This document shows, one piece after another, positions 10,758 to 58,498 of a stretch of DNA of 64,000 nucleotides. The notes under the pieces were generated by a model. The model was not told the DNA's origin and did no database searches. It saw only the letters and a list, made by a program, of their open reading frames with translations. Origin of the DNA: Octopus bimaculoides (taxonomy: Eukaryota); contig NC_068994.1 in the NCBI RefSeq assembly GCF_001194135.2, positions 29,104,342 through 29,168,341 on the forward strand, given 5' to 3'. Positions within the stretch are counted from its first letter, which is position 1. Every line of letters starts with the position of its first letter. The position numbers and the translations under genes were made by a program.

Positions 10758-11165
10758 GGCGCAGGAGTGGCTGTGTGGTAAGTAGCTTGCTTACCAACCA
10801 CATGGTTCTGGGCTCATTCCCACTGCGTGACACTTTGGGAAAGTGTCTTCTACTATAGTCTCGGGCCGACCAAAGCCTTGTGAGTGGATTTGGTAGACGG
10901 AAAACTGAAAGAAGCCCGTCGTATATATGTATATATAGATGTGTGTGTGTATATGTTTGTGTGTCTGTGTTTGTCCCCCCAACATCGCTTGACAACCGAT
11001 GGTGGTGTTATTACGTCCCCGTAACTTAGCGGTTCGGCAAAAGAGACCGATAGAATAAATACTAGGCTTCCAAAGAATAAGTCCTGGGGTCGATTTGTTC
11101 GACTAAAGGCGGTGCTCCAGTATGGCCACAGTCAAATGACAGAAACAAGTAAAAGAGTAAAGAGT
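10758..11165 (+). mobile_element. tRNA-derived SINE family A, full length and well preserved
   Basis: ggcgcaggagtggctgtgtggtaagtagc (A box), gggctcattccc (B-box position), central (TA)/(TG) tract, 3' tail aaacaagtaaaagagtaaagag. CpGs are largely intact. Confidence 0.88.
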
Positions 11166-18789: not shown

Positions 18790-18940
18790 TGCAAGCTTGT
18801 TTCAGTCATTTGACTGCAACCATGCTGGAGCACCGTCTTGAAGGGTTTTAGTCGAATAAATCGAATCCATGACTTTTTTTTTAAAGCCTGGTACTTATTC
18901 TATCAGTTACTTTTTGCCGAACGGCTAAGCTACGGAGTCT
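18790..18940 (-). mobile_element. SINE family A, 3' part
   Basis: cttgtttcagtcatttgactgc..catgctggagcaccg...ggtacttattctatc...tttgccgaacggctaag is the reverse complement of the family A tail. Confidence 0.75.
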
Positions 18941-32902: not shown

Positions 32903-33992
32903 AAGTTCGATATTATAGATTTTTATCCCTCAATATTGAGATCACTGCTTGATAAGGCGACTGAGTTCACAAAATCATATGTTAATATAAACCACATAAA
33001 CCTGGACTTGTATCATGAACATAAGAAAAACAATTTTATTCAGTAAGGGCTTGGCATGGGTTAAAAAAATCAATACTGATGAATTGGCTGATGTATCAAT
33101 GGGAACGTATGACAGTGCGGGCATCTGCAATCTTGCTCTATACCTGGACGATGAGTTAGGAATATCTCACTCTCGATAGATTTAGGAAAAACCTCATTGA
33201 TGCATTTTGTCAATTAGGCTTCAAAATCACTGTTACTACTAATTTGTCAAAAGTCGATTTTTTAGATGTTTCCCTAGATCTGAATTCCCACAGCGGCTTC
33301 AAATGTAGACACATTACAATTTCAAATAAAAAAAAAACGAATCATAAAAATCGACCTAAAAACAGACATGGGGAAATAATATGGTTTGCTCCCCACTTCC
33401 ACCTAAATATTAAAACTAATGTAGACAAGAAATTCCTGTCTCTTTTAGACAAGCATTTCCCAGTAAACCATAAATACAGGAAGACTTGTAACAGATGCTC
33501 AATTAAAATATCATACAGCTGCTGCTCCAATACGAAGCGTCACTATGAGCTCATTCCCAATTTTAACTGTCGAAACCCTGAAGCTTGTTCACTTTACCAG
33601 GTATGTATGATAGACTCCATCACATATGATGCAGAAGTTACAGCAAAGCTTCAAGATGACCTCACCAAAAAGAAAAATTACATTGATTTATGTGATGGTG
33701 GTTTCAAAAGATGTTATGCAGACCACCTATCATCTTTCTGACACATCGACAAAAGTAAAGACACTTAATTGGCTAGCTATGTATGGGGTTTGAAGATCAA
33801 CTGCACACCACATACAATGAAGTGGAGAATCACAGAGAAATCCATATCATAGTAAATGGATCTAAGAAATGCAGCTTATGCGTAGCTGAAAGATCACACA
33901 TTCTCTTTACATCTAAGAATTTTATCGTGATACTGAATTCCAGATCAGAAATTTCCACAAATGCAAGCATATGGACAAATTTCTTTTGTTGA
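32903..33992 (+). mobile_element. Penelope-like element of probable Naiad type, decayed and internally deleted
   Basis: KFDIIDFYPSI, RKTILF...WVKK...DVSMGTYDSAGIC, LYLDDELG, FKITV..N.SKVDFLDVSLDL, IIWFAPHF...KTNVDKKFLSLLDKHFP, YIDLCDGGFKRCYADHLSSF, KKCSLCVAERSHI. Confidence 0.72.
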
Positions 33993-34159
33993 AATGGAGA
34001 ACACCATCCTCTAATGTCTACCTTGCATGCAGGCATGGGTTGGACAGTTTGACAAGTGCTGGCCAGGCAGGAGCCTGCATCAGACTTCTGTGTCTGTTTT
34101 GACAGGGTTTTTATAGCTGGGTACCTTTCCTAATACCAACTACCCAGCAGAGTGAACTA

Positions 34160-34201
<42 letters not shown>

Positions 34202-34563
34202 NNNNNNNNNNNNNNNNNNNNNNNNNNNNNNNNNNNNNNNNNNNNNNNNNNNNNNNNNNNNNNNNNNNNNNNNNNNNNNNNNNNNNNNNNNNNNNNNNNN
34301 NNNNNNNNNNNNNNNNNNNNNNNNNNNNNNNNNNNNNNNNNNNNNNNNNNNNNNNNNNNNNNNNNNNNNNNNNNNNNNNNNNNNNNNNNNNNNNNNNNNN
34401 NNNNNNNNNNNNNNNNNNNNNNNNNNNNNNNNNNNNNNNNNNNNNNNNNNNNNNNNNNNNNNNNNNNNNNNNNNNNNNNNNNNNNNNNNNNNNNNNNNNN
34501 NNNNNNNNNNNNNNNNNNNNNNNNNNNNNNNNNNNNNNNNNNNNNNNNNNNNNNNNNNNNNNN

Positions 34564-35485: not shown

Positions 35486-35989
35486 GTGTATACACGCACA
35501 CACACATGTATAAACTTTCTATGCACACTTGCACACACATATTTTTATATCTCCATGACTACCAAAGGTAGATAAATGGAGGTTTTGGAACATTGCTTAA
35601 CAATTGGATTGTGTACATATACTGTTCTAATGCACTTAGGAAGGTGCAAAACTCACAATATTATATTTACTTTTTACCTTCTATAACTCAAAAGATTTAT
35701 ACATAAGTATATTGTTCTCATCTTCTACAAGCACCTATACAAAAAGATAGGGCTATTGGTTTCATGTTAACAATGAACGTAGTTTGTCAATTCATGAACA
35801 GGTCAAAATATTTCTGGTTGCAGAATTGCTAGCAAAATATGTTCCTTGTCAGCATGAAACTATTGGCTCCTAGCTTTCTGACTTATATTACATTATGAAA
35901 TTTATTAATTTATTCCCTAACTTCTGCTCTTATGTACTTCTTCTTTCTATTTGTTCAACATACATACATACATATGTGTTTATATTCTC

Positions 35990-36287
35990 TTTTTTACTTA
36001 CTTGTTTCAGTCATTTGACTGCGGCCATGCTGGAGCACTACCTTTAGTCGAGCAAATCGACCCCAGGACTTATTCTTTGTAAGCCTAGTACTTATTATAT
36101 TGGTCTCTTTTTCCGAACCACTAAGTTATGGGGATGTAAACATAGCACCATCGGTTGTCAAGCGATGTTGGGGGGGGGGACAAACACAGACACACACANN
36201 NNNNNNNNNNNNNNNNNNNNNNNNNNNNNNNNNNNNNNNNNNNNNNNNNNNNNNNNNNNNNNNNNNNNNNNNNNNNNNNNNNNNNNN

Positions 36288-38612: not shown

Positions 38613-40922
38613 TTAATCAGCTGTAGTTTTTTGTACTTGCTTGCCACCACTACTAGTACCACCACCGCCACCGCCACCGCCACCGCTACCACNNNNNNNN
38701 NNNNNNNNNNNNNNNNNNNNNNNNNNNNNNNNNNNNNNNNNNNNNNNNNNNNNNNNNNNNNNNNNNNNNNNNNNNNNNNNNNNNNNNNNNNNNNNNNNNN
38801 NNNNNNNNNNNNNNNNNNCACCACCACCACCACCACCACCACCACCACTGCTATCTCCACCAAATTGTGAAGCCGAAGAACCAGGTGAATTGGTCCAATC
38901 TCCACCAGAACCTGTTAAGTGTGGGATTGAAAATGGTCTTGACCAGAAATAATTGCTATCCCAAGTTTGTGGCATCTGGGACAAGTAGGAAGAGTTCACC
39001 CATGGAGATCCAATAGCAGGTGGTTGGAGACAAAGGGCTGAAGTAGAGGAAAGTGGCTGATTTGATGGGAAGTTCTCTTGGCGCTCCTTGTGGGAATTTT
39101 TAGCTTTTGACTGTTTTGATTGTCCATTGGATATCATTGTCTGTTGGAGGGAATTTCTGCGCATGTCAGTTGCTGATGATAGATTAAGACAGTTCTGTGA
39201 TACATTAGAACTATTAGAGTCTGAGAATGGCATTTCATAATTGTGGTGAGTGCGTAAATGATTTTTCAGATTAGCCTTTTGTGCAAAAGACTTTTCACAA
39301 AATTGACAATGAAATGACTTTTGACCTGAATGTGTTCGTCTGTGGTTATCTAAGTTAGCTCTCTGTGAGAATGACTTTGAACACAACTCACATGAGAAAG
39401 GCTTTTCTCCAGTGTGTGTTCGACGGTGGCTGTCTAAATTTGCTCTTTGGGGGAAGGATTTATCACATAAATCACACTTGAATGGACGTTCTCCTGTATG
39501 TGTACGCCTGTGACTGTCCAAGTTTGCTCTCTGACAGAAAGATTTTGGGCAGAATTCACAACTGTATGGTCTTTCACCAGAATGAGTCCTCATGTGAATT
39601 TTTAGATTTCCTTGCTGAGCAAAGCTTTTCCTGCAAACTATACAGACATATGGTTTTAAACCTGTGTGTGTACGTTCATGATTTTTGAGGTCTGTTTGTT
39701 GAGAAAATCCTCGAGTGCAGAACTGACAAACAAATGGTTTTTCTCCCGTATGAGTTCTTATATGATTTTTAAGATTGATATTTAGTGTGAAGCTTTTACT
39801 GCACTCTGGACATTGAAACAGTTTCTCTCCAGTATGAATTCGGCGATGACTGTCGAGATTTGCTTTCTGGCAAAAAGACTTACTGCACAAATCGCAGCTG
39901 TATGGTTTTTCACCAGAGTGAGTTCGGAAATGCACTTTCAGATTTCCTTGCTGAGCAAATGACTTGCAGCACACAGTACAAATGTAAGGTTTTTGACCTG
40001 TGTGAGTTCGTTCATGATTCTTCAAGTCTGTTTGTTGTGCAAATGCTTTAGGGCAGTAGGTACAAACATATGGCCGTTCACCACTGTGTATACGATAATG
40101 TGTTTTCAAATTGATTTGCTGTGAAAAAGCTTTGCTGCATATATTGCACTCATACAGTTTCTCCCCAGTATGGATGCGTTCATGATTCTTCAGGTTTGTC
40201 TGTTGCGTAAATGACTTGGAACACGTAGTGCAAGCATAAGGCTTCACACCTGTATGGGTGCGAATGTGACTATCCAGATTTGCTCTCTGTGAAAAGCATT
40301 TGTCACAGAATTCACAATGGAAAGGCCGCTCACCAGTGTGGGTGCGTCGGTGATTGTCAAAATTTGCCCGTTGGGCAAAGGTTTTATTACAGAATTCACA
40401 GCTATATGGTTTCTCACCACTGTGTGTCATCTGATGAGTTTTTAGGTGAGCCCGCTGTGAAAATGCCTTACTGCAGTGGCCACAATAAAAATGCTTTTCA
40501 TCAGCTGGTGCCCGTTCATGATTGTCAAGATTAGTTCTGCGTGCAAAGCCCTTACGGCAGATTTCGCACTTGTAAGGTTTCTGTGAGGTTGCGTTTATAG
40601 AGATTCCTGCAGATGGAATATTATTACCGGTGCTAGGCATGCCATTATTGTTACTGTTGTTGTTGTTGTTGTTATTGTTGTTGTTGTTGTTGTTGTTGCA
40701 GCTGTTGCTGTTATTGTTGTTGTTGATTTGTCCAGGCTGGTTAAGTTTGGCAGGTTTTTGGCTGTATAACCCACTTGCAGCAACATGTGGGTCTCTTGAG
40801 AGGAATACTTTATTGCATAGATCATAACTGAACTGGTTTCCTAAGGCATACATAGACTGGAGAGAATACATGAGCTTGGAATATTCAGAACTTGAACAGT
40901 TCTCCAGTGTGTACTTCATCAT
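38613..40922 (-). CDS. Tandem C2H2 zinc-finger protein (16 fingers, the first lacking its second His), with N-terminal poly-Asn and C-terminal Ser/Gly-rich region
   Basis: 769-aa ORF with CxxC-x3-F-x5-L-x2-H-x3-H units and TGEKP/SGERP linkers from 40574 to 39246. The frame stays open upstream to 40985. A 126-N gap (38693-38818) inside the poly-Gly tract makes the C-terminal length and frame uncertain. Confidence 0.93.
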   Translation of the reverse strand: MMKYTLENCSSSEYSKLMYSLQSMYALGNQFSYDLCNKVFLSRDPHVAASGLYSQKPAKLNQPGQINNNNNSNSCNNNNNNNNNNNNNNSNNNGMPSTGNNIPSAGISINATSQKPYKCEICRKGFARRTNLDNHERAPADEKHFYCGHCSKAFSQRAHLKTHQMTHSGEKPYSCEFCNKTFAQRANFDNHRRTHTGERPFHCEFCDKCFSQRANLDSHIRTHTGVKPYACTTCSKSFTQQTNLKNHERIHTGEKLYECNICSKAFSQQINLKTHYRIHSGERPYVCTYCPKAFAQQTDLKNHERTHTGQKPYICTVCCKSFAQQGNLKVHFRTHSGEKPYSCDLCSKSFCQKANLDSHRRIHTGEKLFQCPECSKSFTLNINLKNHIRTHTGEKPFVCQFCTRGFSQQTDLKNHERTHTGLKPYVCIVCRKSFAQQGNLKIHMRTHSGERPYSCEFCPKSFCQRANLDSHRRTHTGERPFKCDLCDKSFPQRANLDSHRRTHTGEKPFSCELCSKSFSQRANLDNHRRTHSGQKSFHCQFCEKSFAQKANLKNHLRTHHNYEMPFSDSNSSNVSQNCLNLSSATDMRRNSLQQTMISNGQSKQSKAKNSHKERQENFPSNQPLSSTSALCLQPPAIGSPWVNSSYLSQMPQTWDSNYFWSRPFSIPHLTGSGGDWTNSPGSSASQFGGDSSGGGGGGGGGXXXXXXXXXXXXXXXXXXXXXXXXXXXXXXXXXXXXXXXXXXXGSGGGGGGGGGTSSGGKQVQKTTAD

Positions 40923-40990
40923 GATGTTGTTGTTGTTACTATTGTTGTTTAGCTCTAGGTCAGCCCTAAATAAGTTGACCTCTGATCAAA
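40923..40990 (-). repeat. Remnant of repeat family D with (CAA)n tail abutting the ZNF ATG
   Basis: Minus tttgatcagaggtcaacttatttagggctgacctagagctaaacaac aligns by eye to tttgaacataggtctactcgatcagggttgacctgggggtcacacaac at about 5402-5449. Confidence 0.55.
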
Positions 40991-44189: not shown

Positions 44190-45839
44190 AATGACAGTAG
44201 CATTGGCAGTGATGATGATGGTTGTGGTGGTGGTGATGATGATGATGATGATGATGGTGGTGATGTTGATAGTGATGATGGTGACAGAAATATGTTCATG
44301 GCAGTTGAAACACAAAAATGAAGAAATGACAAATGCGCAATTATTGGCAGAGAGGGAGAGATTGAGAGAGAAGAGAGATTGAGAGAGAGAGAAAGAGCAG
44401 AGTTAATCCTTTAGCATTTAAACCAGCCATATCTGGTCCAAATATTCTACCTCTTTTATGTTCAAAGTAGCCAGATCCAGCTTCTCACACCTACCCTACA
44501 ATGTCATTATAAAAATATACAATTACATCATCAAAATCTCGAAGCTACAAGATAAAGCACATTTAATTCAGAACAATGTGAATACATAGACATTACATTT
44601 GACAGAGTAATCTGAATGCTGAAGAGTTAAATGTCTCAATTGTTATGTGGAAGACAGGTGACTGAACCAGTCTGAACAGATGATACAAATAAATGATAAT
44701 CAGTAAAAATTGCCACACACTGACAGCAAAAATTTCCCAAACTGAACAAACTATAGCTACATATTTTTCTATGATTAACCCATTTTAGAACAACCAACCT
44801 GAGACCAGCACCTCTAATTCTTTGATACAAAACCTGTGTGGTTAGGAAGCTTGCTTCTCAAATCCAGGGTTTCAAGTTCAGTCCCACTGTGTGACACCTT
44901 GGGTGAGTGTCTTCTGCTTTAGCCTCAGGCTGACCAAAGCCTTGTGACTGAATTTGGTAGGCAGAAGTTTCCATTGTGTGTATAGATGTGTGTGAAAGTG
45001 CATGTACCTCCTAAAGCTTTTGTAAGTTAGTTAAATTAAAAGAAAACAACCACTGACTTTGATGGTTCAATGTTGTTTTCAATGATGAAGATCCTGATGT
45101 TTAATCAACAGGCCTATCTGCTCATTAAAGTCACTCATCATTATCATCATCATCATCATCATTTAAGATCTGTTGTCCATGCTGGCATGGGTTGCTGGCA
45201 AGCTGGAGAGCTACACCAGGCTCCAGTCTGATTTGGCTTGATTTCTATGGCTGGATGCCCTTCCTAACACCAACCACTTTACAAAGTATGCAGGGTATTC
45301 TTAAATAAAAATACCCTTAAAATAATTCTCAGGTACCATCAGCATAACAATGAATGACAAAGCTGTACTTTTGGAATTACAGGTACAACTCGTCTTCTTT
45401 AAAGAGCAAGAGACAGGAATGAGAAATGTTGGACTTTCCATCCCTCACTGCAATCAAATATATTGATGTTTTACCACTGTTTAACATAATTCCCCGTTGC
45501 AAAGTGTGTGGGATGATGAAGGAGTGTGGAGAATGAATGAATAAGAGGACTGAATGAATAAGAGGAATGAAAGAGTGTGGGGAATGAAGTAATGTGGTCA
45601 GTTAGTCAGAGAGACAAATCTAATCCTAGATTACACTATGTCTGAAAAGTGAAAGGATGGTCACTGCTAAAATGCATTTGATCACAAGTTTGCTTAATCA
45701 GGACGAAACAATAACAACATGAAACTATATAATAACTTTATAAAAAACCTTGTTATTATAAAGTAAGGTTTAAATATCTGAGATGAGATTATTTTTTGGA
45801 CTAACTTCCTCATTAAGGATCCACAAAAATTCAAAAGCA

Positions 45840-46110: not shown

Positions 46111-46334
46111 ACTGCACAAATAGATGATCAAGCATGCAATCATGCATATATACATACACACACAAATATATATATATATATACATGTGATGAGTATAGAG
46201 GGATAAATTATCCAGGTGGGTAACATAAGAGCTCTCAGCTATAGTCCAGGTTACAGCTAACTACATCAAGAAGTAAGAAGCACCAAGTCTCCGTATTATT
46301 TGTAATTGTTTTGGATTATATACATTTATATATA

Positions 46335-46760
46335 TCTTTTATCTTTCACTTGTTTCAATCATTTGACTATAGCTATGATGGAGCACTGCCTTTGAACAAT
46401 TTTTAGTTGAGTAAATTGACCCTGGTATTTAATTTTTTTAAGCCTGTTACTTATTGTATCATTCTCTTTTGCCAAACCACTAAGTGACGGGGATGTAAAC
46501 ACACCAACAATGGTTGTCAAACAATACTGAGGGACAAACACAGGCACAAAGATACACATATATACATACATACACACGATATATACACACACACATACAT
46601 ATGATGAACTTCTTTCAGTTTCTGTCTACCTAATCCACCCACAAGGCTTTGGCCTAAGGCTATAATAAAAAGACACTTGCCCAAGGTACCATGCAGTGGG
46701 ACTGAACCTGGAATCATGTAGTTTGGAAGCAAATTTCTTGTCACAGTTATGCCTGTGCCT
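46335..46760 (-). mobile_element. SINE family A, CpG-decayed
   Basis: Collinear with family A. A second decayed copy lies at about 47235-47610. Confidence 0.8.
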
Positions 46761-48683: not shown

Positions 48684-51184
48684 CTAATGGAAGGAAATGG
48701 AAAGGATGTTTTTAGAAAATAGAGGAATTATTCATAAAAATTGTATTAGAAAAACAAAAATAGTAAGATATTCATCACAAACGCCTCTATTGCATAACAT
48801 TTTTAGCATCTCTAAGGCTCCCCATTATATGTTCATCTCCATTGATGGAGAGAAAAAAGCAATTTTGGACATTTTGAGATTTTATTAAAATTAATGGTAA
48901 ATTTGATCATGACAAAAAAGAACATCTCAGTTATAATATTAAAGAAAAAAGAACCTAGGAAGAAAATAAGATTTATATGCAGTTTGGATACATGAAGCAA
49001 TAGACATAAAAATTAAAGGCATGGTTGTGTGGCTTGCAACCTTATGGTTCTGGGTTCAATTCTACTGCACAGCACTTTGGGCAAGTGTCTCCTACTATAT
49101 AGCCACAGGCTGACAAATGTCATGAGTGAACTTGGTAGATGCAAACTGTGTAAAACCCCTTTGTGTATATATACCCAATGTAATCAATTACTGTGTAGTG
49201 TAATACAATATACCTATGCAACAGAAAATCCAAGAAATCCAAACAAAAAATTTTTCTGTATGGAGTACGTAGAGCATGAAGTCAAAGTGTGAAAAGTAGA
49301 AACAGATTTATTTTTTTTTATATGACTTCCATAAGATTACAGCTGTTTTGTAACCTTCAACATGTAGAATTATTAATTGTGGTGTGCAAAATTATATGTA
49401 CATGCTTATATCAATATGTATGCTCAGCATTATACAATACAATCGTATATTCACAAATTGATGCAAATAAAGAAAGCTAACTCATCAGGTCATCAGAAAC
49501 ATCATGGGTACATCTATGATTCAACTCTAAACATACACACAAAATTTACCCTTATATGTACAATGTTTGGAAGGCCAGAATTGGACAACATTGAAATAAT
49601 TTGATCAGTAAAGAGAAACAAAGAGAGAAATAGATCTGCTAATGGTATTATTCTTTATAGAAGAATTTTAGGATCTTTTTTAAAACGGGGGCCACATTTT
49701 TCATTAATGTTTTACGTAGTGTTGTTTTTGGTACCGAAAGACTTTCAAACTTCGTATACTTATCTATTTTGTGTTATAGAACAGAAAAATATTTTTGTAT
49801 TCGAATTTATTTCATGTAAAAAATTGTCTTATTTCGATAATTTCAACCAATCACTGACGTCCATTCAGTCGATATACATTAAGTGCCGACTACATAAACA
49901 AACGATTCTTCGTTTCATTTGCTTTTTTCATTTTAAATTTGCTTTAACCCTAACCNNNNNNNNNNNNNNNNNNNNNNNNNNNNNNNNNNNNNNNNNNNNN
50001 NNNNNNNNNNNNNNNNNNNNNNNNNNNNNNNNNNNNNNNNNNNNNNNNNNNNNNNNNNNNNNNNNNNNNNNNNNNNNNNNNNNNNNNNNNNNNNNNNNNN
50101 NNNNNNNNNNNNNNNNNNNNNNNNNNNNNNNNNNNNNNNNNNNNNNNNNNNNNNNNNNNNNNNNNNNNNNNNNNNNNNNNNNNNNNNNNNNNNNNNNNNN
50201 NNNNNNNNNNNNNNNNNNNNNNNNNNNNNNNNNNNNNNNNNNNNNNNNNNNNNNNNNNNNNNNNNNNNNNNNNNNNNNNNNNNNNNNNNNNNNNNNNNNN
50301 NNNNNNNNNNNNNNNNNNNNNNNNNNNNNNNNNNNNNNNNNNNNNNNNNNNNNNNNNNNNNNNNNNNNNNNNNNNNNNNNNNNNNNNNNNNNNNNNNNNN
50401 NNNNNNNNNNNNNNNNNNNNNNNNNNNNNNNNNNNNNNNNNNNNNNNNNNNNNNNNNNNNNNNNNNNNNNNNNNNNNNNNNNNNNNNNNNNNNNNNNNNN
50501 NNNNNNNNNNNNNNNNNNNNNNNNNNNNNNNNNNNNNNNNNNNNNNNNNNNNNNNNNNNNNNNNNNNNNNNNNNNNNNNNNNNNNNNNNNNNNNNNNNNN
50601 NNNNNNNNNNNNNNNNNNNNNNNNNNNNNNNNNNNNNNNNNNNNNNNNNNNNNNNNNNNNNNNNNNNNNNNNNNNNNNNNNNNNNNNNNNNNNNNNNNNN
50701 NNNNNNNNNTATATATATATATATATATACATACATACATATATATATATACATATATATATGTGTGTGTGTGTCTTTGTATTTGCCCCCTCTTTTTACT
50801 ATTTGACAACTGGTGTTGGTTTGTTTACATCTCCAAACTTAGCAGTTCAGCAAGTATTCAATAGAATAAGTATCAGACTCAAAAAGACAAAATGAAAACA
50901 AAAAAGAAGGAACTGAGGTTGATTTGTTCAATGAGACCTCCTCAAGGTGGTGCTGCAGGTGGAATATTCCCTAAAAAATTTAGAAATATTCCCTAAAAAA
51001 TTTTCTTATAGCATAACTATGCCACGGAAAGTATGTTTTGCATCTATATTGACTACATTTCATTTCGCTTGAACTTTGTGTGTGTACATTTTGCTGTTTT
51101 CAATATTATCAGTTCTCTGAGTGTGTCTGTGTCTGTGAGTGTGTGTGTTTCTGCAGTTGTTATGTCTATAGTAAACTATAGTAA

Positions 51185-56264: not shown

Positions 56265-58498
56265 CATCATCATTAGCATCATTAGCATCGCCCCCACCAA
56301 AAACCCACCACTACCACCACCACCACCACCATCATAATCATCATTCTTACCACAAGCATCATCAAGCTCATTATATAATAAAATTAATGACATTCCAAAG
56401 GCTGGTGCAGTTTGAATGGGAAATGATGCTCCACCCACCATATTCACCGGACATTGCCCCATCTGATTATCATTTATTCCGCAATCTTCAAAATCATTTG
56501 GACGGAAAAAATATGAATTCTGTAGACAACGTCAGAACAGTAGAAGAGGAGTATTTTCCGTCATGGACATGTGAATTTTGGAAGAGGGGCCTTGCAAGTC
56601 TACCAGACAGATGGAAGAGTATTGTAGAAAATGAAGGGGAGTATATTTTAGATTAAAAAAGAATTTTATCTTAATTTTGAAAAATAAAAATATAAAAAAA
56701 CTACATTAATTATGGGATGCCCCAATGTAAAGGCAACGAAATAAACTATTTTTGGCACAAATATCTTTTACTACTAAAATAATCTTGGAAACAAAGTCGG
56801 GTCCACCATTTTTTAGGTTATTTTCAGGCAATATATCAATTTGCTTCCAATGTTTCACTTTTGTCCAATGTTTTACACATGCATAGAATTCTAAACAGAC
56901 ATTTATGAAAATGTACGCATAAATATTGTATTAAAATAAGCCACAGCCAAAAAAATTTCATTAAAAGACATCCATTTATCTATGTTATGAGGTAGTACAG
57001 TCACTCACTCTCTCACATGCACACACACATACATACAAAAAAGATGTATGCAAATGTATTTATGTATGTGTATAGGAAAGATGTGTGCGTGAGAGAGAGA
57101 TAGAGATAGAGAGAGAGGGAGAGCAAGTGAGTGCTACTTATACATACATGCAAAAAGATACATACAACACACACCTTCACTCACTCATTCTCTCTCTCAC
57201 ACACATGCAAACACACATGTCCATTTCATATACATGTACATACATCTTTCACTTTCTCCTCTCTTTAACTTTCTGCTCTCACTTCAAAGCGAATGATGGC
57301 TTTTCACTTTCTCCTCTCTTTCAATTTCTGCTCTCTTCAAAGCATAAAGAAATAAAATATTTTTGTGGAAAATAACAATCATATGATCCCATATAATCAA
57401 CCATATGATTGAGATGACAACTTTGCTTCTTTAAACGAAAATTCCCTTAAAATAACTTCCTTTGGCACACACACACACACACACTCTAGGTAAAACTTCT
57501 GTNNNNNNNNNNNNNNNNNNNNNNNNNNNNNNNNNNNNNNNNNNNNNNNNNNNNNNNNNNNNNNNNNNNNNNNNNNNNNNNNNNNNNNNNNNNNNNNNNN
57601 NNNNNNNNNNNNNNNNNNNNNNNNNNNNNNNNNNNNNNNNNNNNNNNNNNNNNNNNNNNNNNNNNNNNNNNNNNNNNNNNNNNNNNNNNNNNNNNNNNNN
57701 NNNNNNNNNNNNNNNNNNNNNNNNNNNNNNNNNNNNNNNNNNNNNNNNNNNNNNNNNNNNNNNNNNNNNNNNNNNNNNNNNNNNNNNNNNNNNNNNNNNN
57801 NNNNNNNNNNNNNNNNNNNNNNNNNNNNNNNNNNNNNNNNNNNNNNNNNNNNNNNNNNNNNNNNNNNNNNNNNNNNNNNNNNNNNNNNNNNNNNNNNNNN
57901 NNNNNNNNNNNNNNNNNNNNNNNNNNNNNNNNNNNNNNNNNNNNNNNNNNNNNNNNNNNNNNNNNNNNNNNNNNNNNNNNNNNNNNNNNNNNNNNNNNNN
58001 NNNNNNNNNNNNNNNNNNNNNNNNNNNNNNNNNNNAGGTGATGGGTGGGTGAGGTGGGGGAAGAGGCATTGTTTCTTTAAGAAAAATTAAACTTTAAAAC
58101 AATATATGTATTTCCCAGATTCATAATCTCTGTATTTTTTCATGTGGATAAGAAAATTAAAAAAATTTAAAAAAGTTATAAATTAAGAAATTGCAGTGGG
58201 GATGGGGGAAACAAAAATTTTTAAAAGGGGATTTCTCTGCAAAATTGTATTAACCCCCTTTTATACGATGAAACAATACATAGTTTGTGATCCTTCTTAA
58301 GAACAGAAAGCACTTACATGCAAACCCATGTAAATTGTACCCTCCCCACTTTACTTTTAAACAAACAATAACTTCCATTACACCAGTAATCCAGTTCCCT
58401 ATATATCCGTTGTGCTGATTCTGCCCATAAAAAAGGAACAAATAATACAATGTTGCTGTAGGTCATAACGCCCAGGCAACGCCAGGAAGGATTGCTAG
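54201..58498 (+). mobile_element. Non-autonomous Helitron, copy B (both termini present)
   Basis: 5' A|TCTATATATT...(TG)n at 54201. 3' cccaggcaacgccagg followed by CTAG|T at 58495-58498. The interior is collinear with copy A. Confidence 0.8.
54535..56726 (+). mobile_element. Mariner (cecropia/Hsmar1-like) nested in Helitron B; the middle is lost in gaps or mis-assembly
   Basis: ATG-TAA at 54638, then KEHIRHILLYEFHKG...WFQKFQAGNYSLEDEPRS. C-terminus HPPYSPDIAPSDYHLFRNLQNHL...GEYILD (56387-56656). 3' TIR-like attaattatgggatgccccaat; no 5' TIR seen. Confidence 0.85.

What the first reader, a model, noticed from the sequence alone, without database searches (positions are those of the whole stretch)
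39246..40574. Zinc-finger array with near-uniform Q(-1)/N(+3) code predicts a long A-rich or (NAA)n target
Seen: helix positions -1 to +6 for F1-F16 are RRTNLDN, QRAHLKT, QRANFDN, QRANLDS, QQTNLKN, QQINLKT, QQTDLKN, QQGNLKV, QKANLDS, LNINLKN, QQTDLKN, QQGNLKI, QRANLDS, QRANLDS, QRANLDN and QKANLKN. Gln is at -1 in 14 of 16 fingers and Asn at +3 in 13 of 16. Established: Q(-1) and N(+3) specify adenine, and the engineered Barbas module for AAA is QRANLRA (QRAHLER is GGA). Inference: the protein may read poly(A) tracts or (TAA)n/(CAA)n microsatellites, which form the tails and interiors of retroelements in this very window. It could be a simple-repeat or transposon-tail sensor among the expanded cephalopod C2H2 genes.
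Basis: partly seen in the sequence, partly recalled or inferred. Interest (0 to 1): 0.7.

Follow-up and report, generated by a model that had tools for sequence, protein, structure and literature searches.

The report
Conserved cephalopod adenine-code zinc-finger gene
This is a single-exon gene for a 16-finger DNA-binding protein whose base-reading residues almost all point to adenine; a cuttlefish counterpart keeps the same residues, so it probably reads a conserved A-rich DNA sequence, though nobody has measured what it binds.

Summary
One ORF on the minus strand (38613-40922) encodes 16 tandem C2H2 fingers at 39246-40574. In generic poly-zinc-finger proteins the joint frequency is 5.4%.

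The uniformity is not a leftover of recent duplication. The fingers are only 48-77% identical to each other in DNA and use mixed codons.

A colinear 16-finger orthologue exists in Sepia esculenta transcripts. Synonymous sites are saturated, yet helix residues are 95% identical, against 56% at variable hairpin positions.

The gene belongs to a small, apparently undescribed coleoid family of at least six paralogues. Members share N- and C-terminal motifs, a single-exon CDS and Q/N-rich helices.

The recognition code gives a 48-nt target in which 35 of 39 specified bases are A, so an A-rich target is a reasonable prediction. It is unmeasured.

The transposon-tail sensor idea gets no specific support. 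There is no KRAB domain, no tandem cluster and no arms-race signature. No full-length predicted site in the window exceeds chance.

This is a new member of a known kind, of moderate interest.

The parts
38613..40922 (-). Single uninterrupted ORF (769 codons as read). Start ATG at 40920-40922. The C-terminal end is uncertain because the reading frame runs through an assembly gap.
   Evidence: The start and the first 17 residues (MMKYTLENCSS...) are matched by the Sepia orthologue (MEYKLENCSS...).
40830..40871 (-). N-terminal family motif MYSLQSMYALGNQF (aa 18-31), shared with coleoid paralogues (MYPVQPMY..GNQF).
   Evidence: no Pfam match
40644..40727 (-). Poly-Asn tract encoded by (AAC/AAT)n. 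With a short (AAC)n stretch just 5' of the ATG (40927-40949), it forms the densest (NAA)n cluster in the window.
40491..40568 (-). Finger 1 (RRTNLDN). It is atypical: the second His is replaced (HERAPADEKH). The same defect is present in the orthologue.
39246..40574 (-). Array of 16 tandem C2H2 fingers with TGEKP-type linkers. Gln(-1) 14/16, Asn(+3) 13/16, Asn(+6) 8/16.
38922..39029 (-). C-terminal family motif LQPPAIGSPWVNSSYLSQMPQTWDSNYFWSRPFSIP (aa 632-667), shared with coleoid paralogues (YLQDMPQSWENNYLWSR.F..PP).
   Evidence: no Pfam match
38693..38818 (.). Assembly gap (126 N) inside a Gly-rich (GGN)n tail. The frame and the stop codon beyond it cannot be trusted.

Best explanation
The gene encodes a sequence-specific double-stranded-DNA-binding protein. 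It belongs to a small C2H2 zinc-finger family found so far only in coleoid cephalopods.

Shown:
- It has 16 Kruppel-type fingers with canonical linkers, encoded in one exon.
- Family-specific short motifs sit at both ends.
- A colinear orthologue is expressed in cuttlefish larvae.
- Purifying selection is strongest on the recognition helices.

Inferred from the established recognition code:
- Gln at -1, Asn at +3 and Asn at +6 each hydrogen-bond to adenine in the major groove.
- Successive fingers would therefore read AAA or NAA triplets on one strand.
- The exceptions are ACA at fingers 7 and 11 (Asp at +3), NGA at finger 2 (His at +3) and AAG at finger 1 (Arg at -1).
- Read from finger 16 to finger 1, this gives 5'-AAAAAA NAANAANAA ACA AAN NAANAA ACA NAA AAA NAA AAA NGA AAG-3'.

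Probably only a subset of fingers makes base contacts at any one site. Because the contact residues have been held constant since octopods and decapods split, the target is an evolutionarily stable A-rich sequence. That could be A-rich cis-elements or A-rich simple sequence. It is unlikely to be a lineage-specific transposon. The two terminal motifs presumably recruit partner proteins; this is pure inference.
For: - Anatomy: 16 fingers, with Pfam zf-C2H2 and zf-H2C2_2 far above threshold. The closest solved structures are DNA-bound arrays: ZFP568, the designed Aart, CTCF and PRDM9.
- Not recent duplication: the fingers are 48-77% identical in DNA. Gln is encoded by CAG 8 / CAA 6, and Leu(+4) by six different codons.
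- Orthologue: five Sepia esculenta RNA-seq contigs carry it, gapless across all 16 fingers at 72.8% nucleotide identity.
- Selection: the synonymous difference proportion is about 0.9, which is saturated. pN is 0.022 at contact positions, 0.043 in the helix, 0.139 outside the helix and 0.261 at variable hairpin positions. Helix identity is 106/112 against 72/128 (Fisher P = 1e-12).
- Family: paralogues with the same end motifs and 62-83% joint Q/N fingers occur in Octopus bimaculoides, O. vulgaris, O. sinensis, Sepia pharaonis and unnamed Logan transcriptomes. In paralogue A, 13 of 14 helices are unchanged or differ by one non-contact residue between octopus and a cuttlefish-like species.
- Code: Asn and Gln read adenine (PMC12264921). 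Modules QRANLRA = AAA, RKDNLKN = AAG, SPADLTR = ACA, QRAHLER = GGA.
Against: - No binding data exist for any family member.
- Code-based motifs for long natural arrays are often only partly right, and usually only some fingers engage.
- Positions +2 and many +6 are small or hydrophobic (A, T, I, G, S, V), so nine triplet positions are unspecified.
- Finger 1 lacks a zinc ligand and may not fold.
- Long A-tracts have an unusual groove geometry. The solved A:T-rich readers ZFP568 and SALL4 use small side chains on thymine methyls, not Gln/Asn.
- Q/N-rich arrays of up to 50% joint also occur in unrelated vertebrate and limpet ZNFs, so the pattern is extreme rather than unique.
Confidence: 0.6

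Rival explanations
1. The protein is a sensor of simple repeats or retroelement tails (poly(A), (TAA)n, (CAA)n). It marks or silences such sequences genome-wide, as one of the expanded cephalopod C2H2 genes.
For: - The predicted target is low-complexity and A-rich.
- Poly(A) tails and A-rich microsatellites are evolutionarily stable targets, so strong helix conservation does not exclude this.
- Paralogue L007 carries ten Q[KR]ANLxN fingers, which would read almost pure poly(dA).
- (NAA)6-type tracts are 13-fold over shuffled expectation in the window.
- There is a precedent for a C2H2 protein binding homopolymeric dA.dT: ZNF384 (PMC8589989).
Against: - There is no KRAB or other known silencing domain.
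- The gene is not in a tandem ZNF cluster.
- It has a colinear counterpart in cuttlefish, and its contact residues are conserved rather than fast-evolving.
- The window's tandem repeats are mainly (TA)n, (CA)n and (CAT)n.
- 24 of the 54 (NAA)6 hits lie in the gene's own poly-Asn tract and 5' end.
- The best full-length site match is at chance level.
- ACA, NGA and AAG fingers are conserved at fixed places. That fits a defined composite site better than a homogeneous repeat.
Confidence: 0.15
2. It is a DNA-binding factor, but the simple code misleads. Only a few fingers contact bases, and the real motif is a short mixed sequence that is not notably A-rich. The Q/N residues are kept for other reasons, such as helix packing, phosphate or water contacts, or scanning.
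For: Natural long arrays commonly use finger subsets and non-canonical contacts (review PMC12264921). Nine of 48 positions are unspecified by the code. Finger 1 is degenerate.
Against: Asn(+3)-adenine and Gln(-1)-adenine are among the best-established contacts. Conservation is highest exactly at -1, +2, +3 and +6 (95%) across all 16 fingers, not just a subset.
Confidence: 0.18
3. The array binds RNA (for example poly(A) or A-rich RNA) or proteins rather than double-stranded DNA.
For: Some multi-finger C2H2 proteins bind RNA. Pfam zf-C2H2_jaz and zf-met give overlapping sub-hits.
Against: - Those Pfam hits have no independent stretches and overlap the much stronger zf-C2H2 hits.
- Spacing is canonical C-x2-C-x12-H-x3-H, with TGEKP-type 7-residue linkers throughout. 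That is the DNA-binding architecture.
- The nearest structures are all DNA complexes.
Confidence: 0.06
4. The near-uniform helices are a neutral by-product of recent internal finger duplication or gene conversion and say nothing about function.
For: Fingers 7-9 and 11-13 form a duplicated triplet (77, 74 and 68% nucleotide identity).
Against: That duplication is old. Synonymous codons are scrambled. The same finger order is present in the cuttlefish orthologue and, for fingers 8-13, in paralogue A. The helices are more conserved than the rest of the finger.
Confidence: 0.02

Closest known systems
Coleoid paralogues annotated 'zinc finger protein ZFP2 / 2 homolog / 271-like': O. bimaculoides XP_014771536 and XP_014769006, their O. 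vulgaris and O. sinensis orthologues, and S. pharaonis CAE1165441, CAE1244983
   Same: They share the N-terminal MY..Q.MY..GNQF motif, the C-terminal YL..MPQ.W..NY.WSR.F..P motif and a single-exon CDS. They have 12-16 fingers that are 62-83% joint Q(-1)/N(+3). Fingers 8-13 correspond one to one with paralogue A.
   Different: They are only 44-48% identical overall, so these are paralogues and not the same gene. The window's true orthologue was found only as unannotated Sepia esculenta transcripts. One S. pharaonis paralogue has mostly QRAHLxx fingers (His at +3, i.e. NGA triplets), so the family is not uniformly A-reading. No member has a studied function, and none was found in the paper library by accession.
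Engineered Barbas-type modules and the designed six-finger protein Aart (PDB 2I13)
   Same: The helices are near-identical to modules of known specificity: QRANLDx/QKANLKN versus QRANLRA (AAA), RRTNLDN versus RKDNLKN (AAG), QRAHLKT versus QRAHLER (GGA). Aart is the 4th-best PDB sequence match.
   Different: Those are selected in vitro in a Zif268/Sp1C three-finger context, with Arg, Ala or Val at +6. This is a natural 16-finger array with Asn, Ser or Thr at +6. Resemblance in residues is the basis for a prediction, not evidence of shared descent.
ZNF384 / CIZ / Nmp4
   Same: It is a C2H2 protein reported to bind homopolymeric dA.dT elements (PMC8589989). It is therefore a precedent for zinc fingers reading A-tracts.
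   Different: There is no sequence relationship beyond the finger fold. It was not among the hits. From my own recollection, not tested here, its fingers are not Q(-1)/N(+3)-type.
KRAB zinc-finger proteins (vertebrate transposon repressors)
   Same: Long tandem C2H2 arrays. This is the model behind the transposon-sensor idea. Octopus ZNFs as a class have been predicted in bulk to match TE consensus sequences (PMC10547256).
   Different: There is no KRAB domain (PF01352 absent). There is no tandem cluster in the window. Contact residues are conserved instead of rapidly changing. The label 'KRAB' on two S. pharaonis records is an automatic name.
ZFP568 and SALL4 (solved readers of A:T-rich DNA)
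   Same: ZFP568 is the best PDB sequence match (5v3m, E = 1e-76). It reads a stretch of five A:T pairs.
   Different: They read the thymine methyl groups of the opposite strand with small or hydrophobic side chains, not adenines with Gln/Asn (PMC12264921).
Cephalopod C2H2 expansions (Albertin 2015; Holzinger et al. 2025, PMC12513265)
   Same: This is a coleoid gene family with several paralogues that predate the octopus-squid/cuttlefish split. It corresponds to the 'coleoid expansion' tier described there.
   Different: That work does not describe binding specificities or this subfamily. It names identification of binding sites as an open next step.

Membership tests
Kruppel-type C2H2 zinc-finger array (Pfam PF00096 / PF13465) | C-x2-4-C-x12-H-x3-5-H spacing with conserved Phe and Leu | tested here: met
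   15 of 16 fingers are canonical. Finger 1 lacks the second His.
Kruppel-type C2H2 zinc-finger array (Pfam PF00096 / PF13465) | Profile HMM score above the curated threshold | tested here: met
   zf-C2H2 scores 265.6 bits (cut-off 25.2) with 16 stretches. zf-H2C2_2 scores 400.8 bits.
Kruppel-type C2H2 zinc-finger array (Pfam PF00096 / PF13465) | TGEKP-type 7-residue linkers between fingers | tested here: met
   Linkers are TGEKP, TGERP, SGEKP, TGEKL and similar after fingers 2-15.
Coleoid 'MY..Q.MY / W-x-x-N-Y-x-W-S-R' zinc-finger family (unnamed, defined here) | N-terminal MY..Q.MY..GNQ motif | tested here: met
   aa 18-31 read MYSLQSMYALGNQF, aligned with P0024, P0059 and P0122.
Coleoid 'MY..Q.MY / W-x-x-N-Y-x-W-S-R' zinc-finger family (unnamed, defined here) | C-terminal YL..MPQ.W..NY.WSR.F..P motif | tested here: met
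   aa 632-667. An exhaustive profile search found 8 true hits. Every hit that carries an organism name is from Octopus or Sepia. BLASTP against the Sepia tail gives E = 3e-12.
Coleoid 'MY..Q.MY / W-x-x-N-Y-x-W-S-R' zinc-finger family (unnamed, defined here) | Coding sequence in one exon | tested here: met
   The window ORF is continuous. The same holds for P0024 in O. bimaculoides and for two S. pharaonis genes.
Coleoid 'MY..Q.MY / W-x-x-N-Y-x-W-S-R' zinc-finger family (unnamed, defined here) | Majority of fingers with Gln(-1) and Asn(+3) | tested here: met
   Window 11/16. Named paralogues 9-10 of 13-14. L007 10/12. Exceptions are P0219 (6/15) and the S. pharaonis QRAHL paralogue.
KRAB-ZFP-type transposon repressors | KRAB (PF01352) or comparable repressor domain | tested here: not met
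   No Pfam family other than zinc-finger families was found on the whole protein. The end motifs have no Pfam match.
KRAB-ZFP-type transposon repressors | Rapid turnover of DNA-contact residues between lineages | tested here: not met
   Contact positions are 61/64 identical to Sepia with saturated synonymous sites.
KRAB-ZFP-type transposon repressors | Location in tandem ZNF gene clusters | tested here: not met
   There is no other C2H2 finger in the 64-kb window. In S. pharaonis, two other family members lie 29 kb apart.
A-tract / A-rich DNA readers (functional class) | Measured preference for A-rich duplex DNA | not testable with these tools
   Only a code-based prediction is available: 35 of 39 specified bases are A.
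dsRNA-binding C2H2 fingers (JAZ / zf-met type) | Long inter-finger linkers and the JAZ-type helix | tested here: not met
   Linkers are canonical. The zf-C2H2_jaz and zf-met Pfam hits have 0 independent stretches.

The most novel reading that the evidence does not exclude
The whole family would be a coleoid-specific set of simple-sequence readers. Each paralogue would be tuned by its fixed helix pattern to a different A-rich or purine-rich low-complexity sequence: almost pure poly(dA) for the Q[KR]ANLxN paralogue, AAA/NAA/ACA for this gene, and NGA repeats for the QRAHL paralogue. The conserved terminal motifs would recruit a common cofactor. Microsatellites and A-tracts would thereby serve as regulatory or chromatin landmarks in cephalopod genomes.
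Probability: 0.2. Interest if true: 0.6.

Novelty: new member of a known kind. Interest (0 to 1): 0.4.

Why it matters
Cephalopods have one of the largest C2H2 repertoires outside vertebrates, and no target is known for any of these proteins. A recent study of these expansions names identification of binding sites as an open next step (PMC12513265).

This gene and its paralogues are good first candidates for three reasons:
- They are conserved between octopus and cuttlefish.
- They are single-exon and easy to clone.
- Their predicted specificity is unusually simple and explicit, so one DAP-seq or SELEX experiment can confirm or falsify it.

If the prediction holds, it would show a conserved protein family reading A-rich simple sequence by direct Gln/Asn-adenine contacts. 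That differs from the two solved A:T-rich readers, ZFP568 and SALL4. If it fails, it is a useful warning about applying the code to long natural arrays.

Tried and rejected
- Full-length homologue search and a six-sequence family-profile search. Both were swamped by generic vertebrate, insect and fish ZNF arrays. They yielded only P0024, P0059, P0122 and P0219 as true relatives.
- Word-index search with the C-terminal motif alignment. It returned nothing, not even the sequences in the alignment. The exhaustive representative search with the same alignment worked.
- No protein nearly identical to the window's was found in the database. It shares 160-200-bp interspersed repeats with O. bimaculoides at 72-83% identity. 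It is as far from Sepia as O. bimaculoides paralogue A is (73.1% versus 73.6% protein identity). It is therefore probably an octopod.
- Scan of the window for the code-derived 48-nt site. The best hit was 29/39, against a simulated maximum of 28, so no site was found.
- The idea that uniform helices reflect recent duplication was rejected.
- Pfam search on the N- and C-terminal motifs and on ORF 33244-33741 found nothing.
- Literature searches by protein accession and by the remaining SRA run numbers found nothing.
- Not attempted: structure prediction, because it would not inform base specificity; and a real ZF-specificity predictor, because none is available offline. My triplet assignments are a hand application of the published code.
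Full report
**What is there**

The + strand of 39246-40574 is closed by many stops. On the minus strand there is one long ORF, 38613..40922, of 769 codons as read. It is the only ORF of real size in the window that is not made of N runs or microsatellites. The window is 36.4% G+C and carries 12 assembly gaps. One gap, 38693-38818, lies inside the Gly-rich 3' end of this ORF, so the last part of the protein and its stop codon are not reliable.

A regular-expression scan finds 16 tandem C2H2 fingers between 39246 and 40568. The counts are also as stated: Gln(-1) 14/16, Asn(+3) 13/16, both together 11/16, and in addition Asn(+6) 8/16. Pfam sees only zinc-finger families. Finger 1 is atypical: the second zinc-binding His is missing at the normal spacing (HERAPADEKH).

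**Is it more than chance?**

I took 2058 fingers from generic poly-ZNF proteins retrieved by similarity to this one, which biases the background upward. In that set Gln(-1) is 27%, Asn(+3) is 17.6% and both together 5.4%. The highest unrelated proteins reach 46-50% joint. Eleven of 16 is far outside this range (binomial 4e-11). Fingers share ancestry, so that number is only indicative.

The more telling test is whether the sameness is recent copying. It is not. Finger units are 48-77% identical to one another in DNA. Gln(-1) is encoded by CAG 8 times and CAA 6 times, and Leu(+4) by six different codons. The closest pairs are F7/F11, F8/F12 and F9/F13, which mark an old three-finger duplication.

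**Relatives**

A full-length search was dominated by generic arrays. It nevertheless surfaced an O. bimaculoides protein (P0024, XP_014771536) and a transcript-derived protein (P0059). Both share non-finger motifs with the window protein:
- N-terminal: MY..Q.MY..GNQF.
- C-terminal: YL..MPQ.W..NY.WSR.F..P.

An exhaustive profile search of 1.84 billion representatives with the C-terminal motif gave only eight true hits. Every hit that carries an organism name is from Octopus or Sepia.

One hit, P0127, led to five transcript contigs, L002-L006. Two of the runs are Sepia esculenta larval RNA-seq (PMC11917092, PMC10442824). These contigs encode the orthologue of the window gene. It has the same 17-residue N-terminal extension, the same 16 fingers in the same order, and the same defective finger 1.

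The alignment over the array is gapless at 72.8% nucleotide identity. Synonymous sites are saturated, with a difference proportion of about 0.9. Non-synonymous differences are 0.022 at contact positions (-1, +2, +3, +6), 0.043 in the helix, 0.139 outside the helix and 0.261 at the variable beta-hairpin positions. Amino-acid identity is 95% in the helix against 56% at those hairpin positions (Fisher P = 1e-12).

**The family**

At least six paralogue groups exist.
- Paralogue A: P0024 in three Octopus species, and P0059, P0121 and P0132 in cuttlefish-like samples. In this group 13 of 14 helices are unchanged or differ by one non-contact residue between octopus and cuttlefish-like sequences.
- Paralogue B: P0122 and P0129 in Octopus, P0123 in Sepia.
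- Paralogue C: the window gene and L002.
- L007: ten fingers of the type Q[KR]ANLxN.
- Two genes 29 kb apart in S. pharaonis. One of them is annotated with its finger region wrongly spliced out, and it carries mostly QRAHLxx helices.

The coding sequence is a single exon wherever genomic DNA was available. Full-length identity between window and Sepia (73.1%) equals that of O. bimaculoides paralogue A to its cuttlefish-like counterpart (73.6%). The window also shares short interspersed repeats with an O. bimaculoides locus. The window is therefore probably octopod. The gene duplications predate the octopod-decapod split. No other finger gene lies in the 64 kb.

**How it most likely works**

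The architecture is that of DNA-binding arrays: canonical spacing and TGEKP-type linkers, with ZFP568, Aart, CTCF and PRDM9 DNA complexes as the nearest solved structures.

The recognition code is well established for these residues. Adenine is read by Asn or Gln at the contact positions (PMC12264921). Modules with nearly the same helices have known triplets: QRANLRA = AAA, RKDNLKN = AAG, SPADLTR = ACA, QRAHLER = GGA, QSGNLTE = CAA.

Applying the code by hand gives, from finger 16 to finger 1: AAA AAA NAA NAA NAA ACA AAN NAA NAA ACA NAA AAA NAA AAA NGA AAG. Thirty-nine bases are specified and 35 of them are A. This step is inference, because nothing has been measured.

The positions that break the A pattern are finger 1 (Arg at -1), finger 2 (His at +3) and fingers 7 and 11 (Asp at +3). 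They are conserved in Sepia too. That fits a defined composite site somewhat better than a homogeneous repeat.

**What the evidence says about the transposon-tail idea**

Conservation alone does not exclude it, because poly(A) tails and A-rich microsatellites are stable targets. Nothing specific supports it, however.
- There is no silencing domain.
- There is no cluster and no fast evolution of contact residues.
- The window's tandem repeats are mostly (TA)n, (CA)n and (CAT)n.
- The best full-length match to the predicted site (29/39) is no better than simulations (maximum 28).
- (NAA)6-type tracts are enriched 13-fold over shuffles, as expected for low-complexity eukaryotic DNA. However, 24 of the 54 hits lie in the gene's own (AAC/AAT)n poly-Asn tract and the 30 bases before its ATG.

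**Comparison and verdict**

This is a Kruppel-type C2H2 protein by every tested criterion. It is not a KRAB-ZFP. It is a member of a small coleoid family that I could not find described.

Functionally the nearest things are engineered A-reading modules, with which it shares residues but not descent. ZNF384 is a natural C2H2 protein reported to bind homopolymeric dA.dT. The solved A:T-rich readers use a different chemistry.

I rate it a new member of a known kind. Interest is moderate (0.4), mainly because the prediction is sharp and easy to test.

Noticed in passing
L002:2080-2300 (also L003-L006) and L007:1400-1620: In all five Sepia esculenta transcript contigs the conserved C-terminal tail is in the +1 frame relative to the finger ORF. 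The two frames overlap by 58 nt around an A8 run (GTTAAAAAAAACAG), and one A fewer would fuse them. The tail is clearly homologous to the window's in-frame tail (BLASTP E = 3e-12). A second paralogue, L007, also has its tail in the +1 frame, starting right after CCT TGA G. The cause could be a recent frameshift, slippage at the A run, +1 frameshifting at the stop, or a shared assembly artefact. This is unresolved.
   Followed up: partly
L010:5980-8109 and L010:36738-38801 (Sepia pharaonis CAHIKZ030000917.1): The annotated protein CAE1244983 (P0126, 301 aa) joins the N-terminal motif to the tail and skips the fingers. The genomic DNA has one continuous 710-codon ORF with the finger array in frame. 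Its helices are mostly QRAHLxx (His at +3, predicted NGA triplets). A second family gene lies 29 kb downstream on the same strand.
   Followed up: partly
window 40644-40727 and 40927-40949, minus strand: The gene's own poly-Asn tract and the 30 bases before its ATG are (AAC/AAT)n. This is the best cluster of predicted NAA triplets in the window, which raises the untested possibility of self-binding. The Sepia orthologue has no long Asn run.
   Followed up: no
window 40491-40568, minus strand: Finger 1 has lost its fourth zinc ligand (H-ERA-P instead of H-x3-H). This state is conserved in cuttlefish. A related S. pharaonis paralogue still has an intact first finger with helix RRANLLN.
   Followed up: partly
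window 11000-11161, 18797-18933, 34002-34201, 35931-36134, 45142-45278, 46316-46509: These are short interspersed repeats (about 140-200 bp) that match repeats near the O. bimaculoides paralogue locus at 72-83% identity. They suggest that the window comes from an octopod genome.
   Followed up: no
window 33244-33741, plus strand: This is a 165-codon ORF rich in Cys and Lys. It has no Pfam match and may be a remnant of a mobile element.
   Followed up: partly
window, 12 N runs (e.g. 34202-34563, 49956-50709, 57503-58035): Assembly gaps total 2866 N and are mostly flanked by (TA)n, (CA)n or (TATG)n microsatellites. Several long 'ORFs' in the mechanical list are only gaps plus microsatellites.
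   Followed up: no
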